This document shows positions 3,507 to 63,410 of a DNA stretch of 64,000 nucleotides, one piece after another. The stretch is taken from the IMG/VR virus record IMGVR_UViG_3300048591_000147, positions 62,001 to 126,000 of that record. One strand, given 5' to 3'. The notes under the pieces are model-generated. The model worked only from the letters and a program-made list of their open reading frames with translations, did no database searches and was not told the origin of the DNA. Position numbers and translations under genes: made by a program. Every line of letters begins with the position of its first letter. The first letter of the stretch is position 1.

Positions 3507-3929
3507 ATTTCAGACCCTCCCTCAACCCTCCAGTATAGCATAAAAACCCTCATTTGTCAAGCTTTTTCGACGATTTTCACCATCTGTTACAATCATCGTT
3601 CAGTTTGGCTTAACATTTGAAGAAAATTCACATTTTTCTATAAATTTTGGTCAGACGCTCCGCCTACAAACAGCATACACGAGTAATATATTATTGTCAA
3701 GTCTTGACATGTAATCATTTATAGTGTAGGCGAAACCCTGTTCAGCGTCTGTTCAGGATTGGTATGCTAAAATAGGGTGGAGGTTGGGAGAACTGTGCAA
3801 AATTCTCATCAGAACAGTTTACAATCTCGTTACAAAGTAGGTTTTTCACTGGTATTTCATCGACTTTTTCACCCATTTTGCTTAAAATGTAAAGGAAACT
3901 TGACATTTTCTGTCAAATATTTCGAACGA

Positions 3930-3977
3930 TTCAGGTTCTGTTCAGCTATCATGTGCTAAAATGGGTGCGTGGTCGGA
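3930..3977 (+). repeat. dispersed element copy: tandem TTCAG + TAAAAT + GGGTGCGTGGTCGGA
   Basis: ttcag-gttctg-ttcag-N11-taaaat-gggtgcgtggtcgga; a degenerate copy lies at 3741-3790. Confidence 0.85.
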
Positions 3978-4328
3978 GGGATAGGTCGAATTTCTGGTAA
4001 AAATGTCGATGAACGGTATAAAAAGACCGACGAATGGTGTTTTGCACTAGTGTTTCATCAACTTTTTCGCCATAGTTGCATTAAATTGTCTCTCATGGTA
4101 TGCTTTAGGCTCATCCAACGATCAAAAAGGCACTAGATGAACCCTAATAAGAAGAAAGAAGAACAGTCTAGCAACATGATGGATATGGCAGAGTCTGTCA
4201 TTAGCATCGCTGCTGACATCGTGGAGCTTAGTGCTAGTGCTGCGACTACTGTAGTCGATCATGGCTGTAGCGCTGGCAAGGCTATTGTAGAGAGTATGTG
4301 TGATATCGGATCATTCTTGGATTGACCC

Positions 4329-5054
4329 ATGAAAATTTTTTCAAACTTCAAAGACTATTACGATCACGTTCAAGCCTTCGGGCAGGATGAGGATGTTTCC
4401 TATATCCGTGCTACCAAGACGTATTGCGATCCCTATCGCAACCATTCCTATTTTCGTAATAACAATAAATGGGATTCAAGATATGTCTGGTATAAGGTTA
4501 TTCTTGATGGGGATGGTCGAGAGACTCTAGTTCATCGTGATCCTGAAGAACATATTATAACTCATGCTGGTTGGGGTGGTAATGTCATCACTGTGCACTT
4601 TTGTGGCAAAGTGTATTACGCCATTGAGCATAATGTTCACTCTACCCTTAAGAAGGAATACTTCTACGATCCTGCCAAGTATGAGAAATGGTTTAACGAA
4701 ACCAATCGCAGTCGTTATGATCGGTATTATCTAAAATCCGAATTGGAATTGCTTGCCAGCAATGGTAAGGTTGATCAGCGAGAATTGAACAAGATCAATC
4801 GAACGCCTATCATTCTGATCAAGAAAACTTATGAAGGTTTGTATAATATCCACAATCCTCGTCTAAATGTAATTGAGTTTCAAAAGGTTGTTGATCCTTA
4901 TACTGCATTCATGGAATTGGATATGTTTCTTTCAGGTGTGCTTGGCAAGACTGGCGGGGATATGGTTACAATCTCTGACAAAGACAAGATTGACAAGCAT
5001 GGGTTTGACATGCAATATGGATTCCGTACTCGTCCTAAAGGTGTATCAGCGTGA
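4329..5054 (+). CDS. phage hypothetical protein
   Basis: 241-aa ORF beginning MKIFSNFKDYYD and ending KHGFD...GFR; coupled to its neighbours. Confidence 0.8.
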   Translation: MKIFSNFKDYYDHVQAFGQDEDVSYIRATKTYCDPYRNHSYFRNNNKWDSRYVWYKVILDGDGRETLVHRDPEEHIITHAGWGGNVITVHFCGKVYYAIEHNVHSTLKKEYFYDPAKYEKWFNETNRSRYDRYYLKSELELLASNGKVDQRELNKINRTPIILIKKTYEGLYNIHNPRLNVIEFQKVVDPYTAFMELDMFLSGVLGKTGGDMVTISDKDKIDKHGFDMQYGFRTRPKGVSA

Positions 5055-5368
5055 TCTTTGAGATTTCTTTTATAGCCGCAGCCATAGTGGTTGGGAGTGT
5101 TGTTGGATTCTGGATTGGCAAGTCCTATACAGATAACAAGACTACTGTGCGTCTGCGAAAGCGTGGTTACACCATAAAGAATGTGACTAGCTATGGCTAC
5201 CATGCTGGCTATAAATTTGTCTATAATGGTTTTAATGATAAGCTTCAGACGGTTCTATCAGAAGGTCCAACGTTGCCAGAATGGGATGATGCTGTGGCCA
5301 ATGCGGATGCCCACTATTACGCCAAGACCATCAAAGATTCACCGTTTGACATCAACAAAGTTTGTTGA
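5051..5368 (+). CDS. membrane-anchored hypothetical protein
   Basis: N-terminal hydrophobic segment; GTGA overlap with the upstream stop. Confidence 0.65.
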   Translation: MIFEISFIAAAIVVGSVVGFWIGKSYTDNKTTVRLRKRGYTIKNVTSYGYHAGYKFVYNGFNDKLQTVLSEGPTLPEWDDAVANADAHYYAKTIKDSPFDINKVC

Positions 5369-5439
5369 TATCATTTGTTTCACACAAATGATTCGCTACG
5401 CGATATCATTACATCCTACGAACTGAAGAGATAGATTAA

Positions 5440-5784
5440 ATGAATGTCCGACGATATAGGGTAAATCGCGCTGGTCAGCTTGAAGAATCTGACACTGGCT
5501 TGGTGCTCCGTGTTTGCGATCATTGGAAGGAAGTTGAGAGACTTCAGAAGATCATTGATGAACAAAGTGTGACCATTAAAAAGTTGAAGGCGAACAAACA
5601 GAGTTTCTTTCTTGTGCAGCGATGGTATGGTAGTTCTAACCCAGAAAGGGACGTCAAGGATTACAATGAATTGCAAAGCTTCCTTGACTATTTGGCAGAA
5701 GATAAATCCATCACTGCCATTACCGTCTGTGCATTGCAACCTATTAAGGTCACTTGTAAGCAAGTGTTGACAGTCGAACTGTAA
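5440..5784 (+). CDS. hypothetical protein, distant paralogue of 2006/2342
   Basis: Same layout: short N-terminus, coiled coil, C-terminal ALQPI...VLTVEL. Confidence 0.7.
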   Translation: MNVRRYRVNRAGQLEESDTGLVLRVCDHWKEVERLQKIIDEQSVTIKKLKANKQSFFLVQRWYGSSNPERDVKDYNELQSFLDYLAEDKSITAITVCALQPIKVTCKQVLTVEL

Positions 5785-5822
5785 TCATATACACTAGCTA
5801 CATCAAATCAGGAAGTAAGACA

Positions 5823-6080
5823 ATGTCTGAAGAAACCAAAGTCCTCCTGTTAAAGGAACAGTTGCGGGAGATTTCTACACGGGTGCGTAATGATCTGACT
5901 GAAAAGTTCATTGCCAGCCTTGTTGGATATCTCAGGAACCGTGCCTTGGGTGGCTACACATTCTATGAAAGTGGTCCCATTCCTGATAATATTTGTAAAG
6001 AACAGTTGAAGGAATGGTTCAAGAGCGAAAAGATGATTATGTCTGTCAGGCATGATGACTCTATTGCTGTATACTGGTAA
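5823..6080 (+). CDS. hypothetical protein, tandem paralogue of 6115..6384
   Basis: RALGGY...IPDNICKEQL versus RAQAGY...VPTNICRDTL. Confidence 0.7.
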   Translation: MSEETKVLLLKEQLREISTRVRNDLTEKFIASLVGYLRNRALGGYTFYESGPIPDNICKEQLKEWFKSEKMIMSVRHDDSIAVYW

Positions 6081-6114
6081 TCCATTAAACCCCATCACGT
6101 AAAGGTATAATAAA

Positions 6115-6384
6115 ATGAAAGTTCTTTTGATTCGCTCCATGACTCAGGTCGGTCGCGCTGAAAGCACTACCAATTTCTATGCGGTCATCCTTGACCTGAT
6201 TGTCAAGCGTGCGCAGGCAGGCTATGGTGATCTGAAGTATGAAAAGGTTCCCACGAATATTTGCAGGGATACCCTTGTCTCGCAATTGCGAAATGATGGC
6301 TTCGCGGCTTCAGTCCGTCCCTATGCTGGTTGTCTGTCAGGATTGCGTGAATGGGACGTCCTGAACGTCGAATGGACAAACTGA
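6115..6384 (+). CDS. hypothetical protein, tandem paralogue of 5823..6080
   Basis: Shared motifs as listed for 5823..6080. Confidence 0.7.
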   Translation: MKVLLIRSMTQVGRAESTTNFYAVILDLIVKRAQAGYGDLKYEKVPTNICRDTLVSQLRNDGFAASVRPYAGCLSGLREWDVLNVEWTN

Positions 6385-6606
6385 AATGTTTGAGTTCCTT
6401 TGCTGGCTGTTTGTAGTACTCACGTTCATGTTTCTTGCAACTTCTGATGCAGAGCAGCATGCGCAAATCAGTTCAGCACGTATCGAAGTAGCACAGAAAC
6501 TATGTGCTGAACGTGGAGTGGAGTGGATCTCTCTACGAAAGGTTAAGTGCAAAGACAATTCCGTGTATACTAACTACTATGTCGAAACGAACTAGGATAT
6601 AATCAA

Positions 6607-7122: not shown

Positions 7123-7890
7123 TTGATTAAAAATGTCGGTTGACTTCCATGTGGGCTAGCGTATAATAGGCTTCACAAACGAGGATACAACCGATGGCAT
7201 ACGCAGATATTAAAGCATTGATCGAAAATTGTAATGACGTAAATGAATTGAATGCGCTTTTAGCAGAGTTAAGTGCTGCTTTAGCAAACTTGAATTAACA
7301 CCACGTCATAGCGCTACACAAAAAGCCCAAGCCCATCTTGGGCTTTTTGTTCATGTGGCGTTCAGGTTCAGGCCCGTATAATGTAATCTTACTCACTGGA
7401 GCAAAGATATGGCGATCATGCGGATCATGCGAGTTCAAAATGCGTTTAACGCATTCCTTTCCACCATCCGGGACGAAGTGTCGATCCCATCTGTCAACGC
7501 CACTGGCAACAATGATATTGCTTTTATCATTGCGGACGCTTTGGCAACGATCAATCCCGATGATGACAATGCGCAGCAGATTGCAACCAATCTGTCCTTT
7601 GTATTTGATAATATCGGTCGGAGCTATTAATCATGAAAACCGATAAAGACGAAGAGAAAAAGGTGATCGTTTATTCACTCAACATGGCGGAAGCTTGCGC
7701 GATAATTGCGTCACTTGCGAATCAGATGGCTGCGATAGACAAAGGTGTGTCGCATGGTGTTGTTTCAATGGGCTGTGATGGTGTGCGAATTGTTTTTGGT
7801 ATCAATTGTATAGCTTAATTCAGTTTCATTCAGCTACTGTTCAGTTTCATGTGATATAATTCAATCTTACTCACTAGGGCGAACATCATC

Positions 7891-13341: not shown

Positions 13342-13389
13342 TTCATTTTATGTTCAGTATGGGAATGATAAAATGGGAGCGTGGTCGGA
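13342..13389 (+). repeat. dispersed element copy after the rIIB terminator
   Basis: ttcat-N6-ttcag-N11-taaaat-gggagcgtggtcgga; terminator hairpin at 13322-13341. Confidence 0.8.
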
Positions 13390-36270: not shown

Positions 36271-37099
36271 TTTTATTCTACGCTACCCACAATAATATGT
36301 GGGTAGCGTGCTTGGTATAATAAGCCACACCAGAGTTTTTAGCAGGGTATAGGTGGGGTATACTTACGTAAGCGTTAGCATTTAATGATCACCAAGGGCC
36401 ATAGCAATGACTACACATCAAAACTGTTATGCGACAAGAGCCGAAGCTTTTGAGCGCATTGATTTCTGCTTGCGTAGATCGACATTGCTTTATAAAATAC
36501 TTGGGATTGTAGCGCGATTCACCGTCAAGTATTATGGCCATGACATCCCACTAGTATTGAAGCATCGTTTAGCTTCATTAAGAAACAACATGACATACTA
36601 TTATGATCAGGTGTTCTACGTAAGGTGGGATGGATATTCTGCCGCTGAACACTTAGCTTATATCAAGCGGCAAAGAGAAGAGCTAACTGTCAAGATGTGT
36701 CGAAAGACTTTCAGAAAGAAATTCTACTTCTCCAAGTCCAATAGGATATTAAGCAAATATCTTGGTAATCGATATCCACCAGCATTGCAGAATGCAGGAT
36801 TTGTGTGGGATGAGTTTACCAATCTACCAGTAAATTCTGATGACGATTATACAACCAGTTATAACTCAGAAGATTATAAGATGCCTTGGTGGCATGTCGG
36901 TTGGGATGCAACCTGAACGCAGGCTGAACAGAATTTCGCGGCCATGGTTCTCGCCAACCCTTGATAATAGCTGACTCATTCTGAACCTACGCTGAACGGA
37001 ATTACTTCTTTTATAAATTTAATAAGAATTTACAATTCGGTGAGGGTTCAGCATGGCAGGTTGAAGCTGAATGAACTCTGAACAGAATTCAAAAGTCGC

Positions 37100-37143: not shown

Positions 37144-38079
37144 GAGAGTAGTTATCGATTGGGAGTGTGGTAAAAATACAACACCCCGTGCGCATTTGTT
37201 GCACAAATACAACAAAATAAAGCTTGCATTGTTTTATAAGTGGTGTAGAATACAATACATACACGGGAGACAAGAAATGAACGCACAACATCTCTGCAAC
37301 TTGCACGCCTTGGAAGAACTGCGCTCTGATTATACCAAGCCCATGACTCGTGAAGAATTCATTGCATATTGGCTCAACTGTGGCAATGATCCTTATGATA
37401 TGCCCGCTCTGGAATCATGCATCGAAGGAATCGGTGAAAGCATCAGTGAATTTGGGAGCGAGTGCGCCTTGTTTGGTGATGCTGGTCCCGGTTCTCTTTA
37501 TCATATTCAACGCAGAATCGAACGCATTCAGGGTGTTGTACATCGCTTGAATGAATTTGGTTGCAATATTACGATGCCGCAGTTTCGTATTCCGATGCTT
37601 GGTGCTCATGCTGCATACGATGATCGTTATTGATTCAGCAACTGTTCAGGTTCAACCCGTATAATACATTACATCACCAATCAGGGGTCCGATAACATGA
37701 AGAAATTCAATAGGGTAAAGGATACCGTAGAGTCGGTGATGGAACGGCTCACCGATATTCATCATATGTATTATGATCCCATTGACAAGAGCACTATCGA
37801 TTATCCGAAAATGTGTAGGCATCTTGACTTCCAGAAGGGAGAAGTTAAGAATTACCTAGCCAGAGGTTGGTACGGTGGTGAAATTGTTGCGTTTTTGCAA
37901 CACTTAAAGGAAATTAACCCGCATCAACCCGAAGAACTCGCAATAGCGAACATGACCAGTATTCGCGATATGGTATGCAGGCGTTTTGGTCTTCCGCTTA
38001 CAACACGTCAAATGTGATATTCAGCAACCGTTCAGCTAATTACGTTATAATAGCACCATACCAACCAAGGACAAACGCC

Positions 38080-41043: not shown

Positions 41044-41090
41044 CCGACCTCCAACCCATTTTACCATATCAATACTGAACAATAGCTGAA
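41044..41090 (-). repeat. dispersed element copy (minus strand)
   Basis: Reverse complement reads ttcag-N6-ttcag-N11-taaaat-gggttggaggtcgg. Confidence 0.85.
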
Positions 41091-42238: not shown

Positions 42239-42602
42239 GTAGTTGACAAGCGTCGATGGCTGGAGTAATCTAGCCATCGACGTATCAACAAACATTAATT
42301 AAATCAAGGAGTTACACCATGGCAGTCCGCGCAATTACAGTTTACGAAGCATCCGATGGCAAGAAGTTTGACACGCAAGAGAAGGCGCACGCATACGAAT
42401 TCGCCTCCACTCGAATCAACAACTTCCGGCGAATCCTCGCAAATCCCAACATCATCCGCGCCCCTGAAGGTCTTGCGGTTGACCTGTTCAACAGTCCAGC
42501 GATTCTCGAAGAATTGCGCGATGCTTGCAACAAGGGACTTGACTATCACCGTCGTTACGGGAAGCTCAAGGGTGTAACGCCAGCCAAGTAACAATAGTCG
42601 AG

Positions 42603-42684
42603 TAAGATGAACAAAGCCTGAATGACCTTCAGGCTTGTTCTTTACTTATAATCAATTATAGTGTAAAATGGGTGCGTGGTCGGA
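42603..42684 (+). repeat. long dispersed element copy (hairpin + promoter + G-rich core)
   Basis: First 34 bp identical to 48535-48568, then TTTACT-N17-TAAAAT-GGGTGCGTGGTCGGA. Confidence 0.9.
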
Positions 42685-42782
42685 ACAATAGTGGGATAAA
42701 TTCCGTCCCACTGAGAAATGTTTTCTGTTCAGCTACCATTCAGTCTAGTGTGATACCATATACTTAACAACTGGAGAACACC

Positions 42783-43094
42783 ATGACGTACAAACTGTTT
42801 CTGGATGACGAGCGATTCCCGCCAGAAGATGGTACGGTCTGGATCATCGTTCGTAACTATGCAGAATTTTTGAAGTGTATTGGCACCTATGGGATACCTT
42901 CGTTCATTTCGTTTGACCATGATCTTGGTGAAGGCAAGGATGGTTACGATTGTGCTACGTGGTTGGGTGACTTTTCCATTGACTGTGATCTTGACTTGCC
43001 TGATTTCTATGTGCATAGTCAGAATCCTATTGGCGCTGCTTCCATCAATGGATATCTGAATTGCCTCAAGAAGTTTCGAAAAGAGAACCGTTAA
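42783..43094 (+). CDS. cyclic-phosphate processing receiver-domain protein
   Basis: KLFLDDERFP, ISFDHDLG...GYD and VHSQNP.GA motifs. Confidence 0.75.
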   Translation: MTYKLFLDDERFPPEDGTVWIIVRNYAEFLKCIGTYGIPSFISFDHDLGEGKDGYDCATWLGDFSIDCDLDLPDFYVHSQNPIGAASINGYLNCLKKFRKENR

Positions 43095-44189
43095 GGTATT
43101 GTTCAGCTAGCATGTAGTATCATATCCTTAACAACTGGAGAACAGCATGGCCCGTTTGACTTACAGTGACATCGCGAACCTGCCGCAGAACCATCCTGAC
43201 TACATCCGTTTCATGAAGGAAAACAATGACTTGGATGATGCATATGCAAGCGCATCCGTTTTTGATTTCTTCTGTGAAGATGAAGATGAAGATTATGATG
43301 ATGAAGGGTCGTTGGAGCATTTTGACCGCTACATTGCAGGGGATCGGTAATGAGTCGCGTGTTTGACGACAGTATGGTGTATGATCACGGCGAAGTGATT
43401 TACCTGATTCTGGAGGCGGTCCAGTATTATTCTGGTGATTACATCATTGCAACGTTCTTGGATAAAGAGCTTGCGGAACGGTGGCTTGCCAAGTATAATG
43501 CAGACTTGTCGCATGCGCCCGGTTATTTGGCAACTCACTTTATCACAACGTCACAGCCGAAGGAATTTCCATCGTGAACGTCTACGAAGTCATCGAAGCA
43601 CGCTCCTACGTTCATCCTGAAAAGAATTACAAGGTTAGCATCTATGGTTGCCCACCTGTTGGTGATGGTTGGGAAGTCAAGACATGTGGTTACACAGTTT
43701 ACAACAATGAACGTGGAACCGTTGGCATTGGTCGTGTACCATGGACGAATCGTGAAGATGCGCAGAAGTGGGTTGATGCTGAGCATGCACGGTTGAGTGC
43801 TATCAGGAATCGAAAATGAACATAGAGACAACGGAACGTGGTTTTGGTATCGTGAGGTTCCAAGATGCATATGGTTACAAATGTAGTCTGCAAGAATCTT
43901 CATGTAGTGAAAAGCGCCTTTGGTTTGGTGTGAGTGGTGCTGGCGCAACTGCACAGATATTGGCGCCTGACGCCCGTGCACTGGGAATCCCCACTCATAT
44001 GGCTCTTGGGTGGATTCCATACCATATCCCAAAGGAAGTGATGTTGCATGATCGTATGCTGCTTTCACGGGAACAAGTCAAGGAACTGTTGCCCCTCTTG
44101 CGGTATTTTGTAAAGACTGGCAGGCTGCCTGATCCACCAGAAGAGGAAGTTGTTCAGTAACGGTTCAGCTTCACAATGATAGAATGGTT

Positions 44190-44460: not shown

Positions 44461-44782
44461 ACAAATTCAGGAACCATTCAGGTTAGTAATGATAGAATGG
44501 TTTCAACAAATGAGGAAGAGATACCGTAACTTAGATTGTCACCCTCCGGTTGGGTTAACGATGGTTCGATTCCATCTGACAATGTAAGCGCCCACGGGTA
44601 TATGTCTAACGAGGCTCGGACATACCATTTCAGTGCGATGTGACCGTTACACAAAGGTAAGAGAGTTTGGTGAGATTACACCATTCAGGTATGTCTAGTC
44701 ATGCCCCATCGCCCAATTACACTAGGTAAGCCATGGCCATGGTGAAGCCTACACGTAGAGTCATGATCTATGTGGTGTTGCG

Positions 44783-45794: not shown

Positions 45795-46637
45795 TATGAG
45801 TCATGATAAGAAAGTCAAGGAACATCTAATTGCGCGAATGAAACAGTGTGAACTGTACGCGCTCCATTGGATGCATAGTGCTAGCAATGGTACATGCTTG
45901 AATCGTACCATGTATCGCTATAACGATGCTGGTGAAGAAGTCCTATTGACTCCCGATGAACTTCGTCAGGATGCCATGCGTACATCACAACGTCACATTG
46001 AGAATTTTAACCAAGCCATGGATGATCTCATGGGTTTGCCTGATGAAGCATTCAGCTAGCGTTCAGGTGACTATGGTATAGTTACTATACACAAACGGGG
46101 GTCACCATGAAAAACTACAAGATCACACTTGAAGATAAATTTCTGGTGACGGATGAAAAGTCAACCTCCAATTTCATTTGGGCTCTGACTGGTGGTGGCA
46201 TGTCAAAGGCAGCAACCATCAGAGCACTGAACGCATCGCGCGTACTGGACAATGATGGTCGATTGGAACTGAAGACCAAGGATGGCAAGATCGTCCTGTT
46301 CGAAACCATTCCGAAGTAAATCAAATGGATATGCACGATACAATTTTTGAGCTTGGAGAAAAATGTAAGTCATTACATGGACAACTTCGTGAATTGGGCG
46401 TGTCATCATTTGATACACCCGAAAAATTCCATGTGTATTGTATCCTGAATGCTGCATGGATTTGGACTGCATCCTATCACAGGCTATGCGAATATGGTAT
46501 AACTGATGAGATTGAAGAATCACTTGATGACGCTGAAAGATATCTGAATAAGATTAGAAGGACATAACTTAACGATTCTTCAAGTCAAAAGTCAATGGGG
46601 GCCTAGCTTCCGTTGACTGTTTCTTTACGATACTTCC

Positions 46638-46685
46638 CCGACCACGCACCCATTTTAACATAACTATTCTGAACGATAGCTGAAT
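46638..46685 (-). repeat. dispersed element copy (minus strand)
   Basis: Reverse complement ttcag-ctatcg-ttcag-N11-taaaat-gggtgcgtggtcgg. Confidence 0.88.
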
Positions 46686-47063
46686 GGAGAGCGCCCTGTT
46701 CGGTATATGCAACTCCGACAAACGCTCCCCATTCATTTTGTTACAAACTGACCTTGGCGTCAGCGGGCCATCCCAGATTGGTAGGAAACTTCACCTTTTT
46801 CGCCCCCACTTTCTCTCTTGGGCAGGGGTTGCCCACAACCTGTATCGTAGGTTGCTATCGCTACGGGCTATGGCCATCAGATACAACTCATTATACGAGT
46901 CCTTTGCCTTCTGGCTGCTGTGCTTTAGTGTGGAGCCAGTATGACACCGTGATACTGAACGAACCATGAATAGATTGTATTATCGCTCGTTACATTCTAT
47001 TCAGCAATGATTCAGTTAAGATGTCCCATAATGGATACACACTAAAGCAACGGAGCAAGCGTC

Positions 47064-47939: not shown

Positions 47940-48534
47940 TTCAGAATCCATTCATCTAGTGTGTAGTATCATAGCTACACACTAGAGCAAACGGAGAACG
48001 AAATGTCCGATGAACAGGTTCTGGCAGTGCTGGCACGAATGGCTGAAGACGCTGGCGATTATGCGGAAGCTGATCGCCTTCGCGAACCCTCCTACGATCA
48101 ATCAAAGGAAGTGTGATGAACCTTCCCACCAACATCCAGAATTTGATTGCCACTGCCCTCCCGGTTGACCCCGGAAACTACAACAATTCGATTGAAGCAT
48201 ATGACGGTGGTTATCGCGATGCGATGGAATCAATCGCCATGGCGTTGACTGGCACCATTCCAGAAGGATTGTTGTTGGATGCGGTGAATGCTGCACTGGA
48301 CGCATTCGCCAACAATTGTGCTGATGGTGATTTCGAGGATGATGGCCAGCCATCTGAACAGCAAGAATGGCGCGATTACGATCCTGACTGTTAAGCTGGC
48401 ATTCAGGTAGGTAGCGTATAATACAATACATCAACCAAGAGGGGAACGTCATGCAGGAAACAGAAGATCTGTGGGAAGCTGAATGGAACGCTTGGATGGA
48501 ATCGCAGGAAGATGAAGAGTTGGACTGCTGTCTG

Positions 48535-49956: not shown

Positions 49957-50003
49957 CCGACCACGCACCCATTTTAACATACTCATCCTGAATGAAATCT
50001 GAA
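49957..50003 (-). repeat. dispersed element copy (minus strand) abutting the stop codon at 49956
   Basis: TGA followed directly by CCGACCACGCACCC-ATTTTA, then two CTGAA boxes. Confidence 0.9.
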
Positions 50004-50217: not shown

Positions 50218-50609
50218 AATATTCTCCAATAGAATCGCCCCACCCGGTTGACTAGACACGGATGGGGCAGCCCTGTAGCAATATTTATCAAGGGACTTTT
50301 TGTCGAAGGATTCGTCCCAGTCTTTCTACCTTGCAGCCGACTTTAGGGGCGCTGCTAACCTTCCGGCTTTACCGTTACCTATATGAGGGCCAAGTCATGT
50401 CTTAGGTTCTCTCTAATGCGTCCGTAGACTAATTTGATGCTCTGACCATCTCCGTTTCGATGGGGTTGTTGTTACCCCGTCGATGGATTGAACTATAGAC
50501 CCATCAATTGATTATTGCAACGACTATTTTGTAACAAGTTATGTTGCATTTCATTCAGCTATGATTCATGTTCATGCTGTAGAATTGATCATAACAACTG
50601 GAGAGACAA

Positions 50610-50846: not shown

Positions 50847-52260
50847 GCAAATTCAAGGAAATGCCTGTTGCAACGTGGACCACAGTTGTGGCATCATACG
50901 TCTACTGTCTGTTGACAGCTATCTAAACCTCTATCAACCAAGGAACTCCAATGGGCTATTACATCGAAACAAACAGTAACAAGAACAAGGCGCAGTACAT
51001 CGCTGCCAATCATGGTGGCAAGATTGTCAGCCGTCAAGAGCTTCTGGCTGCTGACGTGAACGCCAATGGTCTGGTCGTTGTTGTCAACAATGGCTTTTTC
51101 GAGGCTGCTGCATTCTGCTTCAGTGATCGCGAACGTCAGGAATTCACTGATCTGAACGATCATCGCCCGAAGCAGTATGTGATCATGGACCGCAAGCTCG
51201 CTGAACAGTTGACCGGATACCGCTAAACAATCCATTCAGCTACGGTTCAGGCTTCGCACTATATAATATTATCCATAGTCAAGGAGAATATTAGATATGC
51301 GAAGCCTGATTGCTGTTCTGATCTTCACCCTGTGCGCCAGCGCGAATGCTGCCACAGTAACAATCGTTGATTTTTCAAAGACTTACGAGCATCAATTTTC
51401 GAATTGCTCAATCAATCTGTATAACACAGAATTTCTATATGCTTCTTGTGAACGATACGCTGCGCCATTCGCCAGTGCATCAGCATCAGATTGGTCGTCA
51501 CCACTGTTCGATGAGATTGGTATCAATGGTGTTTACTGGCATGGCTGCAAGCTGACTGGCGATCCTTCGCTGTCAATTCGCTTTGAATGTAATGTTCCAG
51601 TATCGCCCATGGAATTTGAAGTTGTCGATGAATATAACAATCCTGTTCAGGATTGGTTCAGGTTCTATCGTCCATACTATGGTCCATACACTCACTGATC
51701 GGGAAGACGCCATGAATAACCTGAATGAGTACATCCGCACCAAGAACTTCCGCCTCAAGATGTTTGGTCAGGCTTGCTTGGAACTTCCGAAGGATGCCAA
51801 GAAGATCATGGAGATGCTGGATTCGGATATGTCGCCTGAGAATGTTTCGTGTGATGGTGAACTCAGTCGCGCCGAAGTGGCTCGCAAGATGAAGTTTTTC
51901 AAGAGTGTGGAACAGGAACTCGGGGCATACCAATGATGAGAGTCATAACAGCAGTTGGATTTTGCAGATACAAAGGCTGGCTCGTATCTTTCTCTGATAA
52001 TGCGCCAGTGACTGGACGGTGGAGCGCTACCAAGTATGGTATCAGCATATGTAACACAACCGAGGATGGTTTGAAGCAAATGATTGATATCAATGTCCAT
52101 GACAAATGGCATGCAACCGCTCACCTTCCACGATAGTCTGAACGGGAACGGCTAGGTCTGTAAACCTAACACAATGGGAGAAGTGACTCCCCATCAGAGT
52201 GATGGTCTATCTGGTAAGGATAGACAGGCCGGGTATAAACCGGGTTCCTTATTACCTCTT

Positions 52261-52308
52261 CCGACCTCCAACCCATTTTATACTAACCAACCTGAACAGA
52301 GTCTGAAT
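52261..52308 (-). repeat. dispersed element copy (minus strand)
   Basis: CCGACCTCCAACCC-ATTTTA followed by two CTGAA boxes. Confidence 0.85.
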
Positions 52309-53541
52309 GATAAGTGATTGATTCTGTTACAAAATAGTTGTTGACAGCCAAACAATTGTCAGGCATCATAGCACCATACTGAATCGGAACACGATCATGA
52401 ACGAGGGCACAAGCCGAAAGGTGTTGAAACTGGCCGAACAGAATTATGTTGCGCTTTTGCAACATCCTCATGATAATTGGCGCATTCGCAATCAGCGTAC
52501 ATTATGTGATGCTCGTGAACTGGTGTCCATATTGACTGGCGAGACTGGTCAGGAAGTGCAAGATCGTTTCGAGAATGTGCTTTGGGATGTTCATGAGCTT
52601 TGCGATATGTTGAATAGGAAAGTATGATATGAGCGAACCGCTTAAAGATTGGGAAACATTCACCCATACACTATCAACTGGCACCACTGTTGTGGCTGGT
52701 CTTTGCCATGATACTGGCGATTTCGGTGCAGAATTTTCAAAAGATGGTGTAGAAACTCTGAAATTTTCTTTGTCTGATGAAGCGGTAGAAGTGTTGATTC
52801 AGCTTTGGATCAACCTCAAATATGGTAAAGGTATTACCGAAGGCAAATTCTATGATGTTGCATTCGACTTGGTTGAATGGGTGAAACCGAAATGAACATG
52901 ATCAAAGAAACACGTAAAATACCGCTGAACGAATCGAACGAATTATGTCCGATTGCATATATAAAGCCCATTGCTGGGGAATATTTCGATACTGCATCAA
53001 TCGGCTATGAATGGGGCTATGGGCTGGTATTGGTCTGGCAGCGTCCAGAAACCCAAGCCGAAATGGATGCACGTTTGGCAAGGTCTGCAAGGACCAAAGA
53101 GAATACACGCTTGAACATGCTTGAACAAGTGGCTGCAATCGAAAAGCGAATTGCAAAAGATCAACAAAAATTGCAAAACGTGAAGAAAACCATTGCGGAC
53201 CACTATTCCGAGTGATATAATTCATCCATACTGAAATGGAGCAGAACGATGGACCCGGATTTCACAATCAGTGTCAGCGATGCTGCGGTGCATGTGCATT
53301 ATAAACCGTGGACGATGATTTATAGCAATGAGGATTTTGATCGGGTGAGTCGTCTTTCAAGTGATCTTCTTGCTACTGGTAAGCTCAATTATCAGCAATG
53401 CTTGACGCTTGCAAACGTGGCGATCAAGACTGCCAACCAGAATTCTGTGAAGCATGACCCAACCATGAGTCACATGATGATGTTCAGCAACGATTCAGGT
53501 AAGTAGAGTATAATTCATCCATACCAACTAGGGGACAAGTC

Positions 53542-55785: not shown

Positions 55786-56265
55786 GTTGTTGAGATGAAC
55801 TATACCATAGTTACCTGAACACAAGCTGAACAAGACATTCAGGAATCATTCATATTAGTGTGGTATAATGCGCCGAAATCATCAAGTACGCTACAAAGAC
55901 CCGGAGAATACAAATGTCCAATAATTTTGTCTATCGTGTGATGCGCAATGCTGACAGCACCGAAGGTCGTGGCCCCATGATCTATGTCGTCACATTCGAA
56001 ACCTTTGCTGCTGCAAATGCCTACGTCATGCACAAAGGTTCGCCATATGGTCACAAACTCACCGCTTCTCGCAACACAGACGGTGATAAATGGTCGTATG
56101 ATGGGTGGTATGATGTTCACAAGGATGAAGTGTTGCAAGAGTATGACATCGAACAAGTGAAAAAGAACCTAGCAGAATTGAGGCAGATTGAAGAGCGTGC
56201 AGCAGTCTTGCGCGCACTGACCAAGCTGTAATATACTACCAATCCAACATTAGAGAATTACACAA

Positions 56266-58006: not shown

Positions 58007-58020
58007 CTAGGACTCTCCAT

Positions 58021-58470: not shown

Positions 58471-59738
58471 TTCAGCAACCATTCAGGATGGATAGGCTAT
58501 CATGCTATCCATCCTGAACACATAGAGAAATCCGATGTATATCGTACTGGAACGCGAAGTAGATCACGACGGGGAGAGTGGTAACAATCGTTGTCTAGGT
58601 GATACGTTTGGCCCATTTGCCACATATGAGGGGGCGTCAATATTCGCTGACTACAAGTCCGATCTCTCATCCAACAAAACCATTTGTGGTCAACATTACA
58701 TGGACTATTGTGTAATTGAACTGACCCACCCAAAGGTAGACTGAAATGACTGACCTGACCGATCTTGACTATGCTTTCATTCTGTGCTTCAAACAGTGCA
58801 ACCATGACAATGCTACGCTGTTGCGCAGGTTGATGGCTGAACAGGCTGAATGGGCAGGCATACCAGTCAGTTCCATTGGTGTCAATGATGTTGCATACAT
58901 GATCAATGGGACCGTGGCACGTCTAGGGATTCTCAGTGATTATTACAAAATCCATCGCTGGTATGATGGTATGCGAACGGATGCACTGTCCAACCAGATT
59001 TCTGGCTACAATCCCATGAATGCTATCTTTGATGAACTGGAAACGCCAGATCATTATAAGGTATTGGCAGAGTTTTACATTCGCCACATTCTGAGCTTTG
59101 CAGATGCCATCCGATGGACAATGGCCAAAGACATTCCCGGTCTGGCTGAATATCGTGAAGCTCACAAGGAAAAATATCCTATCCGAGCACTTGACAAACT
59201 TGTGGATGCTGATAGTATTACATCACACAAGCAAGAGCAGGCATCATGAAACTCCAACATTGGACCACCTACGAAAGAAAGCCTGCCGTATCTATTGACA
59301 GGGATGATGGTGTGTATGTTACTACCATATACGGCGAAAAAGGTGCCGATGATCTGTTGAAGCTGGCTGCCATCCTGTTGGTTGAACACATGCACGCAAA
59401 TGGAGTAAGATAATGTTTCCACCGATGGTCTTGATAGCTGTTCTTTGTGTCAGTCTATTCTTTCTTGGCGTATGGATGGTAAAGCTCAAGAATGACGATG
59501 GCGCTGAACGGCTGGAATCCAAAAACGTAATTTTATTCTCCGCACCACTGTTGTTTTTCTGCAACGGTGGTGTTGTTTTTATGCCACACCAACAAAATAA
59601 TACCACATTTCTGAGACAATTGCTTTAACAATCAATGACATAGCATCACAAAACATCTGCAATATTGTTGTTGACAGTGCTCTGTAATGGTGTATAATAC
59701 ATTACATCAACCAGCAACTACACTCAAAGGACCAGACG

Positions 59739-60403: not shown

Positions 60404-60825
60404 GGAAGTGGTGCACAAGATGTGTGGTAAAAATACAACACATTTGTTCAGCTAGCATTCAGCTTCATACTGTATAATTGTTTTATCAAATAAGGAGAGC
60501 GGTCATGGATTGGAAGTATTCGATGCTCGGTATCTGGCACATTGGCACCATGTGTGGGATTGACAAGGGCCGTACAGCTAGCATTGAAGTCCATGGCAGT
60601 GGTGAAGCTGACACGGGTGGCTTTTGCATGCTCAACCGTTTCCCGAAGATCGGTGACAAAACCATTGGCCATTGGTCCATTGAACGACTCTACTGCGATT
60701 CACTGGAAAAAGCCAAGACGATTGGTCGCCACTGGGTGGAGAATGGCATCCTCTAAAGCCGATTTGTTCAGCCAGCGTTCAGGTTGATCCCGTATAATAC
60801 AATTCAACAACAACGGAGAGCGAAC

Positions 60826-61182
60826 ATGAACCCCATCGAACAATATGGCAACGTGGTTTCCGGTATCCTCGCCACCACGTATCCGAAGCCTGATGCAGTC
60901 GTAGGTGATGAGGCAACCATCCTGAATGGTCGTGATCGTGAACCCGCCAAGATCGTCGAGATCATCCGTCGAAAGGATGGCCGCAAGATCATCGGTTACT
61001 TGCTGCAACAATTCAAGTGGACCATGGACTCGGAGTCTGAAGGCTACGCCAAAGAGATCCACTGGGACCAACCGTCAGGCGAGCCAAGGGTTTATGCGGT
61101 GGTCACCCATGGTAAGCTGAAGGGCACGGTGAAAGGGGCTTACATTGGCAAGGCAAACCCCTTCTATGACCGATCATTCTAA
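60826..61182 (+). CDS. hypothetical protein
   Basis: Tandem-TTCAG promoter at 60767, GGAG RBS, terminator at 61187-61216. Confidence 0.75.
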   Translation: MNPIEQYGNVVSGILATTYPKPDAVVGDEATILNGRDREPAKIVEIIRRKDGRKIIGYLLQQFKWTMDSESEGYAKEIHWDQPSGEPRVYAVVTHGKLKGTVKGAYIGKANPFYDRSF

Positions 61183-61230: not shown

Positions 61231-61278
61231 CCGACCTCCAGCCCATTTTAGCATATCATTCCTGAACGCATGATGAAT
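61231..61278 (-). repeat. dispersed element copy (minus strand)
   Basis: CCGACCTCCAGCCC-ATTTTA followed by CTGAA and ATGAA boxes. Confidence 0.85.
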
Positions 61279-61727
61279 GGGGTATCCATCTGGGTGATCT
61301 TCCCATTTGGAACCCCATTCAGGTACAGATGTTCGCGGTTCCCCCAACATCACTCTATCAGTCTGTCGATAGAGGTACTTCATAATCATTATTTTTTTAT
61401 ATTCCTAATTTATAGTGGTTCGTCCAGTCAAAGACTGTTACCTTAGTCAGGTCCAAGTCATGTTCTATGCCCTCCATTCTGTCTTTAGTGGGTTCATTTA
61501 TTACATTTTAGGCGAGTATCGCAGACTATGTAAGTTTGATTAGAGGTTAGAAGACACTTTCTCCTTGGTGGGTGTGTGTGTTGCTTTAGTGTGGAGCCAG
61601 TATGACACCATCAAGCTGAACGGTTGCTGAACAAATTGTAATGTAAATCGTTGATTTCGTTACAATTCAGTGCTTGACTGCATAACATAATAGGTCTATT
61701 ATTCAATCATACCAAGTGGAGAACGAC

Positions 61728-62204: not shown

Positions 62205-62213
62205 CCAAAACTG

Positions 62214-62245
62214 TTCAGCAATCGTTCAGCTAAGTGATGTATAAT
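62214..62245 (+). promoter_or_regulatory. tandem-TTCAG promoter (representative of about 40 sites)
   Basis: TTCAG-CAATCG-TTCAG-CTAAGTGATG-TATAAT, followed by an A/C-rich leader and AAGGA RBS. Confidence 0.8.
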
Positions 62246-62271
62246 TCAATCATACCAACAAGGAACAGACC

Positions 62272-62517
62272 ATGAACTCCAGCGAACTCAAGCGCAACAT
62301 CGAACGTAACAATCCCGGTAGCCTGTTCTTTTCGCGTGGTGCCATGCAGAATGGCGGTGACACGATGCGCAACTATGGCGTCTGCACTGCAAAGATCATG
62401 ACCCCAGATGGTGAAAAAGAGGTATGGGAATTGTATCGCCGTCAAGCCACCCCACGGGGTTACACTAGCTCAGTGTATTGGGACAAGGCAACATTCAAAG
62501 TGGTCTACAAGGTCTGA
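62272..62517 (+). CDS. small hypothetical protein
   Basis: NPGSLFFSRGAM..GDTMRNY; monocistronic cassette. Confidence 0.75.
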   Translation: MNSSELKRNIERNNPGSLFFSRGAMQNGGDTMRNYGVCTAKIMTPDGEKEVWELYRRQATPRGYTSSVYWDKATFKVVYKV

Positions 62518-62577
62518 TTCAGCTAACGTTCAGGTTCTGAGCGTATAATACATTACATCAACCAAGGGAATGCAGCC

Positions 62578-62967
62578 ATGATCCTGAACACTGTCGAAGC
62601 CACCATCGCTTGCGAAGCTGCAACCACCATTCTGCTGGGGCATTTCCCGCATTTCATGGTCAATATTCGGGTGACGAGAATTCTTGGCGAGGTCGTTCAG
62701 TTCACCGTTGCCAACGTTCCCACCGAAAAGGATGCGCCCTATGGGATCATCCACAATGCATCCTTTCTGCTCAAAGGTCTGATCCAGACTGACCGCAAGG
62801 GAGCATACATGGAGAATCCGATTCTGTCTGGCCGTCACCTGAAGTTCCGCAAGATCAGCGGTTCCAGTGAAGCCGAAGTGTTGCAAAAGTTCGTGGCATG
62901 GTGTGTCAAGAACAAGGCGGAAATTCTCGCCATCGTCCCGAAACTTCGCGGGTATGAGGTCAGTTAA
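62578..62967 (+). CDS. hypothetical protein
   Basis: Tandem-TTCAG promoter at 62518-62549 abutting the previous stop codon. Confidence 0.75.
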   Translation: MILNTVEATIACEAATTILLGHFPHFMVNIRVTRILGEVVQFTVANVPTEKDAPYGIIHNASFLLKGLIQTDRKGAYMENPILSGRHLKFRKISGSSEAEVLQKFVAWCVKNKAEILAIVPKLRGYEVS

Positions 62968-63245
62968 GCTGGCGTTCAGGTTGTGGGGGTATAATACAAC
63001 ACATACCAAGGGAGAACGCAAAATGTCAAAGAAACGACGTGTCATGGTTCGCGAGACAACGATACGTTTCTCCCCAGTCTTCGAGTGTGAGTGTTGCGGG
63101 AAGGTAGAGGTTGGAGTTGCATTCTCTCAGACATTCTATCATCGTCTACCAGAGCTTGACGAGATAGATGTTCCAGCGCATACGCTGCCACCCGGCTGGA
63201 TAATGTTTCACAATCTCCAGTACTGCGTCAATTGTAACATCGAAT

Positions 63246-63270
63246 GAGCCCTTCGGGGCTCTTTTTTATT
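63246..63270 (+). terminator. intrinsic terminator
   Basis: GAGCCC-TTCG-GGGCTC followed by a T run. Confidence 0.8.
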
Positions 63271-63285
63271 GTGCCACCACTTCCT

Positions 63286-63332
63286 CCGACCACGCACCCA
63301 TTTTACTACACCCACCCTGAACAGAACCTGAA
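63286..63332 (-). repeat. dispersed element copy (minus strand)
   Basis: CCGACCACGCACCC-ATTTTA followed by two CTGAA boxes. Confidence 0.9.
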
Positions 63333-63410
63333 CGACAAGTCATTGATTTTGTTCAGCTTGTGTTCAGCTAACTACTGTAGAATACTGACTATACCCAATG
63401 AGGATAGATT

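What the first reader, a model, noticed from the sequence alone, without database searches (positions are those of the whole stretch)
3741..63383. Novel promoter class: TTCAG-N6-TTCAG-N10/11-TANNNT at gene junctions
Seen: about 28 plus-strand sites (e.g. 3741, 3930, 7829, 34993, 37634, 38021, 42728, 44153, 44466, 46051, 47000, 47940, 51235, 53484, 55848, 58471, 60447, 60767, 62214, 62518, 63352) and at least 10 minus-strand sites. Two TTCAG boxes one helical turn apart replace the -35 hexamer at a fixed distance from a good -10. The first box often abuts or overlaps the previous stop codon (TGA-TTCAG at 37631, 47937, 58468, 62515), so many small genes form self-contained promoter-leader-ORF cassettes with shared leaders (ACATCAACCAAGG, TAACAACTGGAG). 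Established: T4 middle promoters use a MotA box at -30, and PhoB/OmpR-type activators bind 11-bp direct repeats; this motif matches neither consensus. Inference: a third temporal class driven by an unknown phage activator or a host response regulator, possibly also a recombination seed for cassette shuffling.
Basis: partly seen in the sequence, partly recalled or inferred. Interest (0 to 1): 0.8.

Follow-up and report, generated by a model that had tools for sequence, protein, structure and literature searches.

The report
Tandem TTCAG-box jumbo-phage promoters
About forty promoters in one part of an uncultured 315-kb wastewater phage carry two TTCAG boxes 11 bp apart where the usual -35 element should be, which points to a still unidentified transcription factor controlling a block of small accessory genes.

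Summary
TTCAG-N6-TTCAG occurs 37 times against 0.25 expected, only at that spacing. 27 of the 37 exact sites, plus 10 one-mismatch sites, are followed after 10 or 11 bp by a near-consensus -10. Plus-strand sites sit about 17-27 nt upstream of an SD and ATG. None has a usable -35, and 46% have an extended -10 (TGn). In orthologous promoters of related phages the boxes stay conserved while the spacers drift. The class is confined to about 62 kb of the 315-kb genome and to one clade of uncultured jumbo phages. It is absent from about 116 kb sampled from two cultured relatives. A canonical TTGACA class coexists with it and swaps with it on identical core and leader sequences. Best reading: sigma-70-type promoters in which a factor bound to tandem boxes at about -36 and -25 replaces the -35 contact. 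This works like T4 MotA, PhoB/CreB or lambda CII promoters, but the sequence matches none of them. No regulator was found and no transcript data exist, so the activator, its origin and its timing are all inferred. It is a new variant of a known kind.

The parts
3741..3773 (+). TTCAG promoter, N11, -10 TAAAAT, G-rich variant downstream; lies in a 1.4-kb ORF-free region
   Evidence: conserved in L003 and L005
3930..3962 (+). TTCAG promoter, N11, TAAAAT plus G-rich module; no ORF follows directly
7350..7382 (+). TTCAT/TTCAG promoter, N11, TATAAT, drives ORF 7409-7630
   Evidence: the ortholog in L001 has TTGACT-N17-TATGCT instead
7829..7860 (+). TTCAG promoter, N10, TATAAT, drives the GP88-family gene 7891-8631
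   Evidence: orthologs in L001 and L003 carry TTAAG..TTCAG
13342..13374 (+). TTCAT/TTCAG promoter, N11, TAAAAT plus G-rich module, drives ORF 13429-13950 (after rIIB)
   Evidence: orthologous in L001, L003 and L005
34993..35025 (+). TTCAG promoter, N11, TAGACT, drives ORF 35053-35526
37634..37665 (+). TTCAG promoter, N10, TATAAT, abuts stop TGA, drives ORF 37697-38017
38020..38051 (+). TTCAG promoter, N10, TATAAT, drives the SprT-like ORF 38080-38613
   Evidence: ortholog in L018
40004..40047 (+). three in-phase TTCAG boxes (40004, 40015, 40026), N11, TATCAT, drives ORF 40071-40292
42728..42759 (+). TTCAG promoter, N10, TACCAT, leader TAACAACTGGAG, drives ORF 42783-43094
43091..43123 (+). TTAAG/TTCAG promoter, N11, TATCAT, overlaps the previous stop, drives ORF 43147-43350
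   Evidence: ortholog in L037 also has TTAAG
44153..44185 (+). TTCAG promoter, N11, TAGAAT; no ORF downstream (ORF-free stretch before the tRNA at 44782)
44466..44498 (+). TTCAG promoter, N11, TAGAAT, preceded by a hairpin; no ORF downstream
46051..46082 (+). TTCAG promoter, N10, TATAGT, drives ORF 46107-46319
47000..47032 (+). TTCAG promoter, N11, CATAAT, drives the ArdC-like/zincin gene 47064-47939
47940..47972 (+). TTCAG/TTCAT promoter, N11, TATCAT, abuts TGA, drives ORF 48003-48116
48391..48422 (+). TTAAG/TTCAG promoter, N10, TATAAT, drives a small ORF 48451-48537
50554..50585 (+). TTCAG/TTCAT promoter, N10, TAGAAT, drives ORF 50610-50846
51235..51267 (+). TTCAG promoter, N11, TATAAT, drives ORF 51297-51698
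51646..51678 (+). TTCAG promoter, N11, CATACT, drives ORF 51712-51936
53483..53514 (+). TTCAG promoter, N10, TATAAT, drives ORF 53542-54408
55838..55869 (+). TTCAG/TTCAT promoter, N10, TATAAT, drives ORF 55914-56231; back-to-back with 55830(-)
58471..58503 (+). TTCAG promoter, N11, TATCAT, abuts TGA, drives ORF 58535-58744
60447..60478 (+). TTCAG promoter, N10, TATAAT, drives ORF 60505-60756; 64 nt downstream of a canonical G-rich promoter
60767..60798 (+). TTCAG promoter, N10, TATAAT, drives ORF 60826-61182
62214..62245 (+). TTCAG promoter, N10, TATAAT, drives ORF 62272-62517
62518..62549 (+). TTCAG promoter, N10, TATAAT, abuts TGA, drives ORF 62578-62967; same -10 and leader as canonical promoter 59671
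62964..62995 (+). TTAAG/TTCAG promoter, N10, TATAAT, drives ORF 63023-63247
63352..63383 (+). TTCAG promoter, N10, TAGAAT, drives ORF 63411-63788; back-to-back with 63332(-)
36913..37082 (-). cluster of three tandem-box pairs (37082, 36996, 36928); only 36996 has a -10 (TATTAT, N11)
41058..41090 (-). TTCAG promoter, N11, TAAAAT plus G-rich module; points antisense into the 3' end and hairpin of plus-strand gene 40739-41023
42591..42622 (-). doubtful site (TTCAG/TTCAT, TATTGT) that overlaps a hairpin
46652..46684 (-). TTCAG promoter, N11, TAAAAT plus G-rich module; no minus-strand gene downstream
49971..50003 (-). TTCAG promoter, N11, TAAAAT plus G-rich module; antisense to 49210-49956
52275..52307 (-). 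TTCAG promoter, N11, TAAAAT plus G-rich variant; no minus-strand gene downstream
55799..55830 (-). TTCAG promoter, N10, TATAGT, upstream of the minus-strand gene cluster 55605-55080
   Evidence: ortholog in L037
60185..60217 (-). TTCAG promoter, N11, TACAAT, reads straight into a GC-rich hairpin
61245..61277 (-). TTCAT/TTCAG promoter, N11, TAAAAT plus G-rich variant, faces a plus-strand terminator
61599..61631 (-). TTCAG promoter, N11, CATACT, followed by an SD-like AAGGAG
63300..63332 (-). TTCAG promoter, N11, TAAAAT plus G-rich module, faces a plus-strand terminator
   Evidence: ortholog in L037

Best explanation
These are promoters read by the host sigma-70 RNA polymerase through a near-consensus -10, often with an extended TGn. 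The -35 contact is replaced by a sequence-specific protein bound head-to-tail to two 11-bp units (R-TTCAG-S-W-W) centred near -36 and -25. Because the boxes lie a fixed 10-11 bp from the -10, the protein would touch the polymerase (sigma region 4 and/or alpha) and recruit it. That is class II, or sigma-appropriation-like, activation. The factor is most likely phage-encoded and made from the canonical TTGACA promoters that coexist in the region. If so, the TTCAG class would be a delayed-early or middle class driving about 40 small accessory genes. What is shown: motif, spacing, position, conservation and distribution. What is inferred: that they fire, that a protein binds, that it activates, that it is phage-encoded, and the timing. 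A secondary role is that the roughly 60-bp promoter-leader cassettes act as homology patches where gene modules are exchanged between related phages.
For: The motif is overwhelmingly non-random and specific for one spacing. The -10 matches at least 5/6 in 34/37 sites. TGn occurs in 17/37 against an 8.6% background. No site matches a -35 better than 3/6, so the 20 sites without TGn should be weak on their own. Plus-strand sites lie about 17-27 nt upstream of an SD and ATG in roughly 25 of 29 cases. Phylogenetic footprint over 21 orthologous pairs at roughly 70-97% nucleotide identity: box positions are conserved in 18-21 of 20-21 pairs, the N6 spacer drops to 12/21, and the box2-to-(-10) stretch drops to 9/20. 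Only three box substitutions occur together with a -10: C3A in box 1, and G5T in either box. The same -10 and leader appear with either TTGACA or the TTCAG boxes (59671 against 62518). An orthologous gene has TTCAT..TTCAG here and TTGACT-N17 in L001. So the boxes stand in for a -35. The class is regional: 9/9 strict sites lie within about 62 kb of a 315-kb genome. It is clade-specific: present in the 315, 307, 350, 173, 130 and 72 kb contigs and absent from 116 kb of RAS14 and Xoo-sp13. [quoted passage not shown]
Against: There are no transcript 5' ends. The only runs that hold the phage are wastewater libraries that behave as DNA and are kept as contigs. No DNA-binding regulator, MotA, AsiA or sigma factor was found among the 117 ORFs submitted from the window or in 20 kb of flanks; about 230 kb of the genome was not examined. 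Nearly half of the sites have TGn with a consensus -10 and could fire without help. Many sites are paralogous copies that share leaders, so the count overstates independent origins. The host is unknown.
Confidence: 0.55

Rival explanations
1. A host response regulator of the OmpR/PhoB family (CreB/BlrA-like) binds the tandem boxes, so the phage wires this gene block to a host signalling state.
For: 11-bp direct repeats placed 10-11 bp from the -10 are the signature of pho-box-type promoters. [quoted passage not shown] No phage regulator was found.
Against: TTCAC-N6-TTCAC occurs 0 times, and position 5 is G or T and never C at any site that has a -10. Making about 40 promoters of a lytic phage depend on a conditionally active host regulator is unusual. 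The motif is absent from cultured relatives that infect Stenotrophomonas and Xanthomonas, which have CreBC-type systems. The host is unknown.
Confidence: 0.12
2. The boxes are operators for a phage (or host) repressor or shut-off factor. The promoters fire on their own through the -10/TGn and are later silenced.
For: 46% have TGn with a near-consensus -10, which can suffice for sigma-70. Boxes at -39 to -23 would occlude the polymerase. Box clusters without a -10 exist (36913-37082).
Against: 20 of 37 sites have neither TGn nor any -35. The spacing to the -10 is fixed at 10 or 11 bp, which an operator does not need. The boxes swap with a TTGACA -35 on identical cores, which implies a positive, -35-like role.
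Confidence: 0.13
3. The boxes are read directly by an alternative or phage-encoded sigma-like subunit, or by a remodelled sigma-70, without a separate DNA-binding activator.
For: Invariant upstream elements at fixed distance from a start-site-proximal element are what sigma-specific promoters look like. Some jumbo phages redirect or replace host polymerase.
Against: The -10 with TGn is of the standard sigma-70 type. A duplicated 5-mer at an 11-bp period does not fit a single region-4 contact. Spacings of 9-10 and 20-21 bp from either box to the -10 fit no known sigma. No sigma domain was found in the window or its flanks.
Confidence: 0.08
4. The repeat is mainly a mobile or recombinogenic cassette (PeSL-like). 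The boxes are hitch-hiking parts of a recently amplified promoter copy and have no binding function of their own.
For: Promoter-leader units fall into sequence families. Homology-block ends lie on cassettes at 9/28 against 2.8 expected. Strain contigs join at the boxes. PeSL is a precedent (PMC2839356, PMC4122927).
Against: In orthologs the boxes stay fixed while the 6-bp gap and the 10-11 bp linker diverge. The N6 gap differs among copies while both boxes are invariant. The box sequence is the same in genomes only about 55-65% identical in the GP88 protein. Stem-loops, part of the PeSL definition, are not enriched.
Confidence: 0.07

Closest known systems
Phage T4 middle promoters (MotA box plus AsiA-remodelled sigma-70, 'sigma appropriation')
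   Same: A phage-specific upstream element at a fixed distance replaces the -35. The -10 is stringent and sigma-70-type. About half carry TGn. There are dozens of copies inside the early/accessory gene region, alongside canonical early promoters. The genome also carries T4-like rIIA, rIIB and Rnl1 (PMC2988021).
   Different: T4 has a single 9-bp box (a/t)(a/t)(a/t)TGCTTtA centred at -30, read by a monomer. Here there are two 5-bp boxes at an 11-bp period, centred near -36 and -25 and ending 10-11 bp from the -10. TGCTT at the right distance occurs once in the window. No MotA or AsiA domain was detected.
[quoted passage not shown]
   Same: Two direct repeats with an 11-bp period on one DNA face, lying about 10 bp upstream of the -10 in place of the -35. 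The cre/blr tag has the same N6 gap and shares TTCA (PMC13214185; pho-box geometry is from general knowledge).
   Different: The fifth base is G (or T), never C. The cre tag and the pho box are both absent from the window. No receiver plus winged-helix regulator is seen in the phage region. The host is unknown.
Lambda/P22 CII-dependent promoters (TTGC-N6-TTGC straddling the -35)
   Same: A phage-encoded activator binds a short direct repeat with a 6-bp gap across the -35 region of promoters that lack a usable -35 (PMC2629481). The register relative to the -10 is nearly the same, by my own calculation from the pRE sequence recalled from memory.
   Different: CII uses 4-bp boxes at a 10-bp period on three promoters of a temperate phage, each with a poor -10. 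Here there are 5-bp boxes at an 11-bp period on about 40 promoters with excellent -10 elements, in a large, apparently virulent phage. TTGC-N6-TTGC occurs once.
PeSL cassettes (promoter-early stem-loop) of T4-type phages
   Same: Repeated promoter cassettes concentrated among small ORFan genes in a plastic genome region. Cassette sequences coincide with the junctions of gene-content differences between relatives (PMC2839356, PMC4122927).
   Different: PeSLs have consensus sigma-70 -35 and -10 elements plus a terminator stem-loop. The TTCAG cassettes lack a -35 and have no enriched stem-loop. The canonical G-rich promoters at 42641 and 48573, each preceded by a hairpin, come closer to a PeSL.

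Membership tests
T4-type middle promoter (MotA/AsiA) | MotA box (a/t)(a/t)(a/t)TGCTTtA 12+/-1 bp upstream of the -10 | tested here: not met
   TGCTTnn-N11-13 followed by a -10 occurs once in 64 kb. At the TTCAG sites that position is occupied by box 2.
T4-type middle promoter (MotA/AsiA) | Stringent sigma-70 -10, about half with TGn, no -35 | tested here: met
   -10 at least 5/6 in 34/37; TGn in 17/37; best -35 match no better than 3/6.
T4-type middle promoter (MotA/AsiA) | Genome encodes MotA and AsiA homologs | tested here: inconclusive
   No such Pfam or PHROG hit among the 117 submitted window ORFs or in the flanks. About 230 kb of the genome was not examined.
OmpR/PhoB-type promoter (pho box, cre/blr tag) | Two direct repeats at a 10-11 bp period placed about 10 bp upstream of the -10, replacing the -35 | tested here: met
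   The period is exactly 11 bp; the gap to the -10 is 10 or 11 bp.
OmpR/PhoB-type promoter (pho box, cre/blr tag) | Half-site consensus (CTGTCAT for PhoB; TTCAC for CreB/BlrA) | tested here: not met
   0 copies of TTCAC-N6-TTCAC and 0 of CTGTCA-N5-CTGTCA. Position 5 is G in 27 pairs and T in 7, never C at sites with a -10.
OmpR/PhoB-type promoter (pho box, cre/blr tag) | A cognate receiver plus winged-helix regulator binds the site | not testable with these tools
   The host is unknown. The only receiver-like hit is a cREC_REC RNA-repair domain, and no Trans_reg_C hit was seen.
Lambda CII-dependent promoter | TTGC-N6-TTGC across the -35 and a CII homolog | tested here: not met
   TTGC-N6-TTGC occurs once, which is chance level. 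No CII-like HTH was detected.
PeSL cassette | Consensus sigma-70 -35/-10 promoter joined to a terminator stem-loop | tested here: not met
   No -35. Hairpin within 60 nt upstream in 16/37 sites against 32% of random windows.
PeSL cassette | Cassettes flank ORFans and mark insertion, deletion or replacement junctions between related phages | tested here: inconclusive
   9/28 homology-block ends lie within 15 nt of a cassette against 2.8 expected, P about 0.001, and contig joints fall at the boxes. But any gene-boundary mosaicism would look similar, and k-mer assembly breaks at repeats.

The most novel reading that the evidence does not exclude
A clade of uncultured jumbo phages encodes a previously undescribed transcription activator, with no detectable homology to MotA, CII or OmpR-type proteins. 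It binds as a head-to-tail pair to TTCAG-N6-TTCAG and takes over the -35 function of host sigma-70 polymerase at about 40-50 promoters. That would be a second, independently evolved form of sigma appropriation. A subset of these promoters would fire G-rich antisense or non-coding transcripts, whose role could be transcriptional insulation or R-loop priming.
Probability: 0.4. Interest if true: 0.65.

Novelty: new variant of a known kind. Interest (0 to 1): 0.55.

Why it matters
Transcription programmes of jumbo phages outside the phiKZ and T4 groups are almost unknown. A cis-element this sharp (two invariant 5-mers, fixed phase, about 40 copies, conserved across genomes whose proteins have diverged to about 55-65% identity) is a ready handle for fishing out its reader by DNA pull-down. 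It would also be a compact, orthogonal promoter/activator pair for engineering. The coexistence and interchange of TTGACA and TTCAG upstream modules on identical cores shows how phages re-time genes by swapping a 25-bp module. If instead the promoters prove constitutive, the finding reduces to an unusual repeat family.

Tried and rejected
1. Megablast against INPHARED phages found no near relative. Protein searches place the phage near XacN1, Xoo-sp13, CM1 and RAS14.
2. Transcript evidence: the only runs holding the phage are wastewater 'RNA-Seq' libraries that behave as DNA and are stored as contigs. They give no 5' ends and no strand.
3. Regulator hunt: Pfam at E<=1e-3 and <=0.05 and PHROGs on 117 submitted ORFs, direct scans of 40 mid-size or canonically promoted ORFs, and precomputed Pfam for 20 kb of flanks. 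All of this yielded only a weak HTH in rIIB and an RNA-repair receiver domain. The rest of the genome was not walked because look-ups are limited, and structure prediction of arbitrary ORFans was judged unlikely to pay off.
4. Hybrid promoters: no TTCAG half-site lies upstream of the canonical TTGACA promoters.
5. Co-variation of the box sequence among relatives: none seen. All clade members use TTCAG, so phage and host origin cannot be told apart that way.
6. Host lead from the clade-specific 20-mer in 596 Gb of bacterial genomes: two hits, both inside ordinary coding sequence, with about one expected by chance.
7. Rfam at a permissive threshold has no family for the G-rich module.
8. RNA-level reading of the boxes (a processing or binding signal in read-through mRNA) was rejected. 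It does not explain the fixed distance to the -10 or the minus-strand copies.
9. Restriction-site or integron attC readings were rejected on sequence grounds. The base before the box is A or G and never C, so it is not CTTCAG, and GTTCAGG does not fit GTTRRRY.
10. One failed script and one oversize query carried no information.

Full report
WHAT THE WINDOW IS. The window is positions 62,001-126,000 of IMG/VR contig 3300048591_000147, which is 314,956 bp long. It is an uncultured jumbo phage found in wastewater, sludge and freshwater metagenomes. It encodes rIIA, rIIB, a T4-type RNA ligase 1, a GP88-family protein, homing endonucleases and about 20 tRNAs. No phage in INPHARED is close in DNA. 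By protein, the nearest cultured phages are Stenotrophomonas phages CM1 and RAS14 and Xanthomonas phages Xoo-sp13 and XacN1, at 55-59% for GP88. Closer uncultured relatives exist at 64-89%. My codon-usage gene map gives 137 ORFs, nearly all on the plus strand.

TTCAG-N6-TTCAG occurs 37 times against 0.25 expected. Only the 6-bp gap is enriched: 22 plus and 15 minus sites, with 0-3 at every other gap. 27 of the 37 are followed by TANNNT after exactly 10 or 11 bp. One box mismatch adds 10 sites, and three exact sites use CATAAT or CATACT. The total is 29 plus-strand and 11 minus-strand sites. An unbiased scan for any 5-mer repeated at period 10-12 upstream of a good -10 recovers TTCAG alone, apart from frame-shifted versions of the same boxes. 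The true repeat unit is wider than the pentamer. The base before each box is always A or G, the base after is mostly C (box 1) or G (box 2), and two A/T-rich positions follow.

THEY LOOK LIKE PROMOTERS, AND THE BOXES STAND WHERE THE -35 SHOULD BE. The -10 matches TATAAT in at least 5 of 6 positions at 34 of 37 sites. TGn precedes it at 17 of 37 sites, against an 8.6% background. At 16-18 bp spacing, no site matches TTGACA better than 3 of 6. With the -10 at -12 to -7, box 2 lies at about -27 to -23 and box 1 at about -38 to -34. On the plus strand, about 25 of 29 sites are followed by a Shine-Dalgarno sequence and a start codon 17-27 nt after the predicted start point. One leader is 38 nt and one is 48 nt. 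N10 sites mostly have TATAAT. N11 sites have TAAAAT, TATCAT or TAGAAT. All of this is sequence inference; no transcript ends were available. The four 'RNA-Seq' wastewater runs that hold the phage are flagged as probably DNA and are kept only as contigs.

SELECTION ACTS ON THE BOXES THEMSELVES. I aligned 21 orthologous promoter pairs from related contigs (L001, L003, L005, L018, L037). Box positions are conserved in 18-21 of 20-21 pairs. The gap between the boxes falls to 12 of 21, and the stretch between box 2 and the -10 falls to 9 of 20. Across the window, only three single substitutions occur together with a -10: TTAAG in box 1, and TTCAT in either box. The same boxes, gap and distance recur in contigs of 307, 350, 173, 130 and 72 kb. 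So the motif is not just a recently copied repeat.

A SECOND, CANONICAL CLASS COEXISTS AND INTERCHANGES. About 45 sites follow AGnnS-TTGACA-N16-18-TAtgAT. They are dense at 0-40 kb (rIIA, rIIB, Rnl1, tRNAs), whereas the TTCAG class is dense at 32-64 kb. The promoter at 59671 (TTGACA) and the one at 62518 (TTCAG boxes) share the same -10 and leader. The gene at 7409 has TTCAT..TTCAG here and in L005, but TTGACT-N17-TATGCT in L001. So the tandem boxes and a -35 hexamer are alternative upstream modules on one core. This is the best sequence-level argument that the boxes supply a positive, -35-like function.

DISTRIBUTION. A strict pattern (both boxes, N10, TATAAT) scanned over IMG/VR hits this genome nine times, the 307-kb and 350-kb relatives three times each, and other contigs once each, which is chance level. 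Eight of the nine own-genome hits are inside the window. The ninth is 0.8 kb beyond its right end. The 10 kb to the left has none, and the class stops about 1.8 kb beyond the right end. About 116 kb sampled from RAS14 and Xoo-sp13, including the regions around GP88, rIIA/B and the tRNAs, has neither TTCAG promoters nor any analogous tandem-repeat promoter.

WHO READS THE BOXES. I found no candidate. Pfam and PHROGs on the 117 ORFs I submitted give RNA-repair, nuclease, deaminase, lysis and anti-restriction domains, but no HTH or winged-helix regulator, MotA, AsiA or sigma factor. The exceptions are a weak HTH match in rIIB and a cREC_REC receiver domain of RNA-repair systems. The flanks are equally blank. 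All clade members use the same box, so co-variation cannot separate a phage factor from a host factor. The host is unknown, and a 20-mer scan of bacterial genomes gave only two chance hits inside coding sequence.

MOST LIKELY MECHANISM. Three features fit a sequence-specific protein bound as a head-to-tail pair that contacts the polymerase and replaces the -35 contact. The distance to the -10 is fixed. The two boxes lie on one face of the helix. More than half of the sites have no -35 and no TGn. Three known systems work this way. T4 MotA has its box 12+/-1 bp from a stringent -10, with about half TGn and about 60 promoters inside early regions (PMC2988021). [quoted passage not shown] Lambda CII uses TTGCN6TTGC (PMC2629481). 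The sequence matches none of them: there are 0 cre tags, 0 pho boxes, 1 CII-like site and 1 MotA-like site in the window. I put 0.55 on activation by a bound factor, probably phage-encoded and made from the canonical promoters, which would make this a delayed-early or middle class. The rivals are a host response regulator (0.12), an operator for shut-off (0.13), direct reading by another sigma (0.08) and a purely recombinational repeat (0.07).

CASSETTE SHUFFLING. Ends of homology blocks between the window and the 307-kb relative fall within 15 nt of a cassette 9 times out of 28, against 2.8 expected. In the wastewater contigs, joints and loose ends fall on the boxes. One example is a contig that carries the 37634 promoter fused at 62542; another is a joint between the two minus-strand promoters at 63305 and 60202. 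This fits the PeSL model of T4-type phages (PMC2839356, PMC4122927). It is not decisive, because any gene-boundary mosaicism or k-mer assembly break would look similar. Unlike PeSLs, the TTCAG cassettes lack a -35 and show no enrichment of stem-loops, so most are not insulated units.

A SUBCLASS WITH A G-RICH MODULE. All nine TTCAG sites whose -10 is TAAAAT (all N11) continue with GGG-N5-GGTCGG-RR. Six further copies sit behind a TT[GT]AC -35 with a palindromic spacer. The module is therefore independent of the upstream element. Six of the TTCAG-linked copies are on the minus strand with no gene downstream. They face the terminators or 3' ends of plus-strand genes. Exact copies are confined to the same genome region and clade. 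Rfam has no match. Its function is open: it could be an initial-transcribed or discriminator element, an antisense or insulating transcript, or an R-loop-prone leader.

VERDICT. The finding is a real, clade-specific promoter family with a new upstream element. In architecture it is a new variant of activator-dependent or sigma-appropriation-type promoters.

Noticed in passing
window 3957, 9715, 13369, 37123, 42664, 48596, 54966, 60383 (+); 41063, 46657, 49976, 52280, 61250, 63305 (-): A conserved module, TAAAAT-GGG-N5-GGTCGG-RR, follows the -10 of about 15 promoters, behind either TTCAG boxes or a TT[GT]AC -35. The minus-strand copies have no gene downstream and point into the ends of plus-strand genes. 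It resembles the 5' end of the tRNA at 38663 and could form two-tier G-quadruplexes. There is no Rfam match. It is confined to this genome region and clade.
   Followed up: partly
window 9-34 kb mainly (e.g. 12202, 16731, 19673, 20933, 22556, 24571, 24866, 28191, 29972): There is a second promoter family, AGnnS-TTGACA-N17-TAtgAT. It often has CACTAAATAG in the spacer and drives rIIA/B, Rnl1 and the tRNA clusters.
   Followed up: partly
window 42614-42636 and 48545-48569: A hairpin, AAGCCTGAA-N5-TTCAGGCTT, contains the TTCAG pentamer as an inverted repeat. It sits directly upstream of two canonical G-rich promoters, a terminator-promoter composite closer to a T4-type PeSL.
   Followed up: no
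window 2725-4137 and 44160-44780: These are ORF-free stretches. The first holds five promoters: plus-strand 2823, 3741 and 3930, and minus-strand 3560 and 3700. The 3741/3930 pair is conserved in L003 and L005. These may be non-coding RNA genes or a regulatory or replication hub.
   Followed up: no
window 63332(-)/63352(+) and 55830(-)/55838(+): Back-to-back divergent TTCAG promoters form palindromic arrays of four boxes. Three box pairs are clustered at 36913-37082 (-), and three boxes lie in phase at 40004-40030 (+).
   Followed up: no
window 14266-14343: A tRNA with anticodon CTA (an amber suppressor, which ARAGORN calls tRNA-Pyl). RAS14 also annotates a tRNA-Sup-CTA. This raises the possibility of stop-codon read-through or recoding in this phage group.
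   Followed up: no
window 38663-38767 and 38827-39444: A 105-nt tRNA has an insertion of about 30 nt in the anticodon region (Rfam 61 bits; ARAGORN missed it). An HNH endonuclease ORF follows it.
   Followed up: no
window 56266-58470: An RNA-ligase-domain ORF (56266-57003) is followed by a minus-strand NUMOD3 homing-endonuclease ORF (56987-58006) and then a 149-aa plus-strand ORF. This may be a gene interrupted by an endonuclease insertion. A GIY-YIG endonuclease lies on the minus strand at 34024-34953.
   Followed up: no
window 15042-17913 and scattered ORFs: The window holds a rich RNA-repair-type gene set: PP-loop ATPase, Rnl1, a second RNA ligase, cREC_REC receiver domain, HD, Macro and deaminase. 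The DUF7487 gene is 557 aa in relatives but appears here as two shorter overlapping ORFs (15625-16311 and 16298-16753).
   Followed up: no
L003 7510-7560: In the 173-kb relative, five TTAAC pentamers lie at an exact 11-bp period. This is an iteron-like or ArcA-box-like array, unrelated in sequence to TTCAG.
   Followed up: no
L049 4692-4711 and L048 7920-7939: The 20-mer TAAAATGGGTGCGTGGTCGG also occurs in two bacterial MAG contigs inside ordinary coding sequence; in L049 it translates as HKMGAWS. About one chance hit was expected, so I treat this as coincidence.
   Followed up: yes
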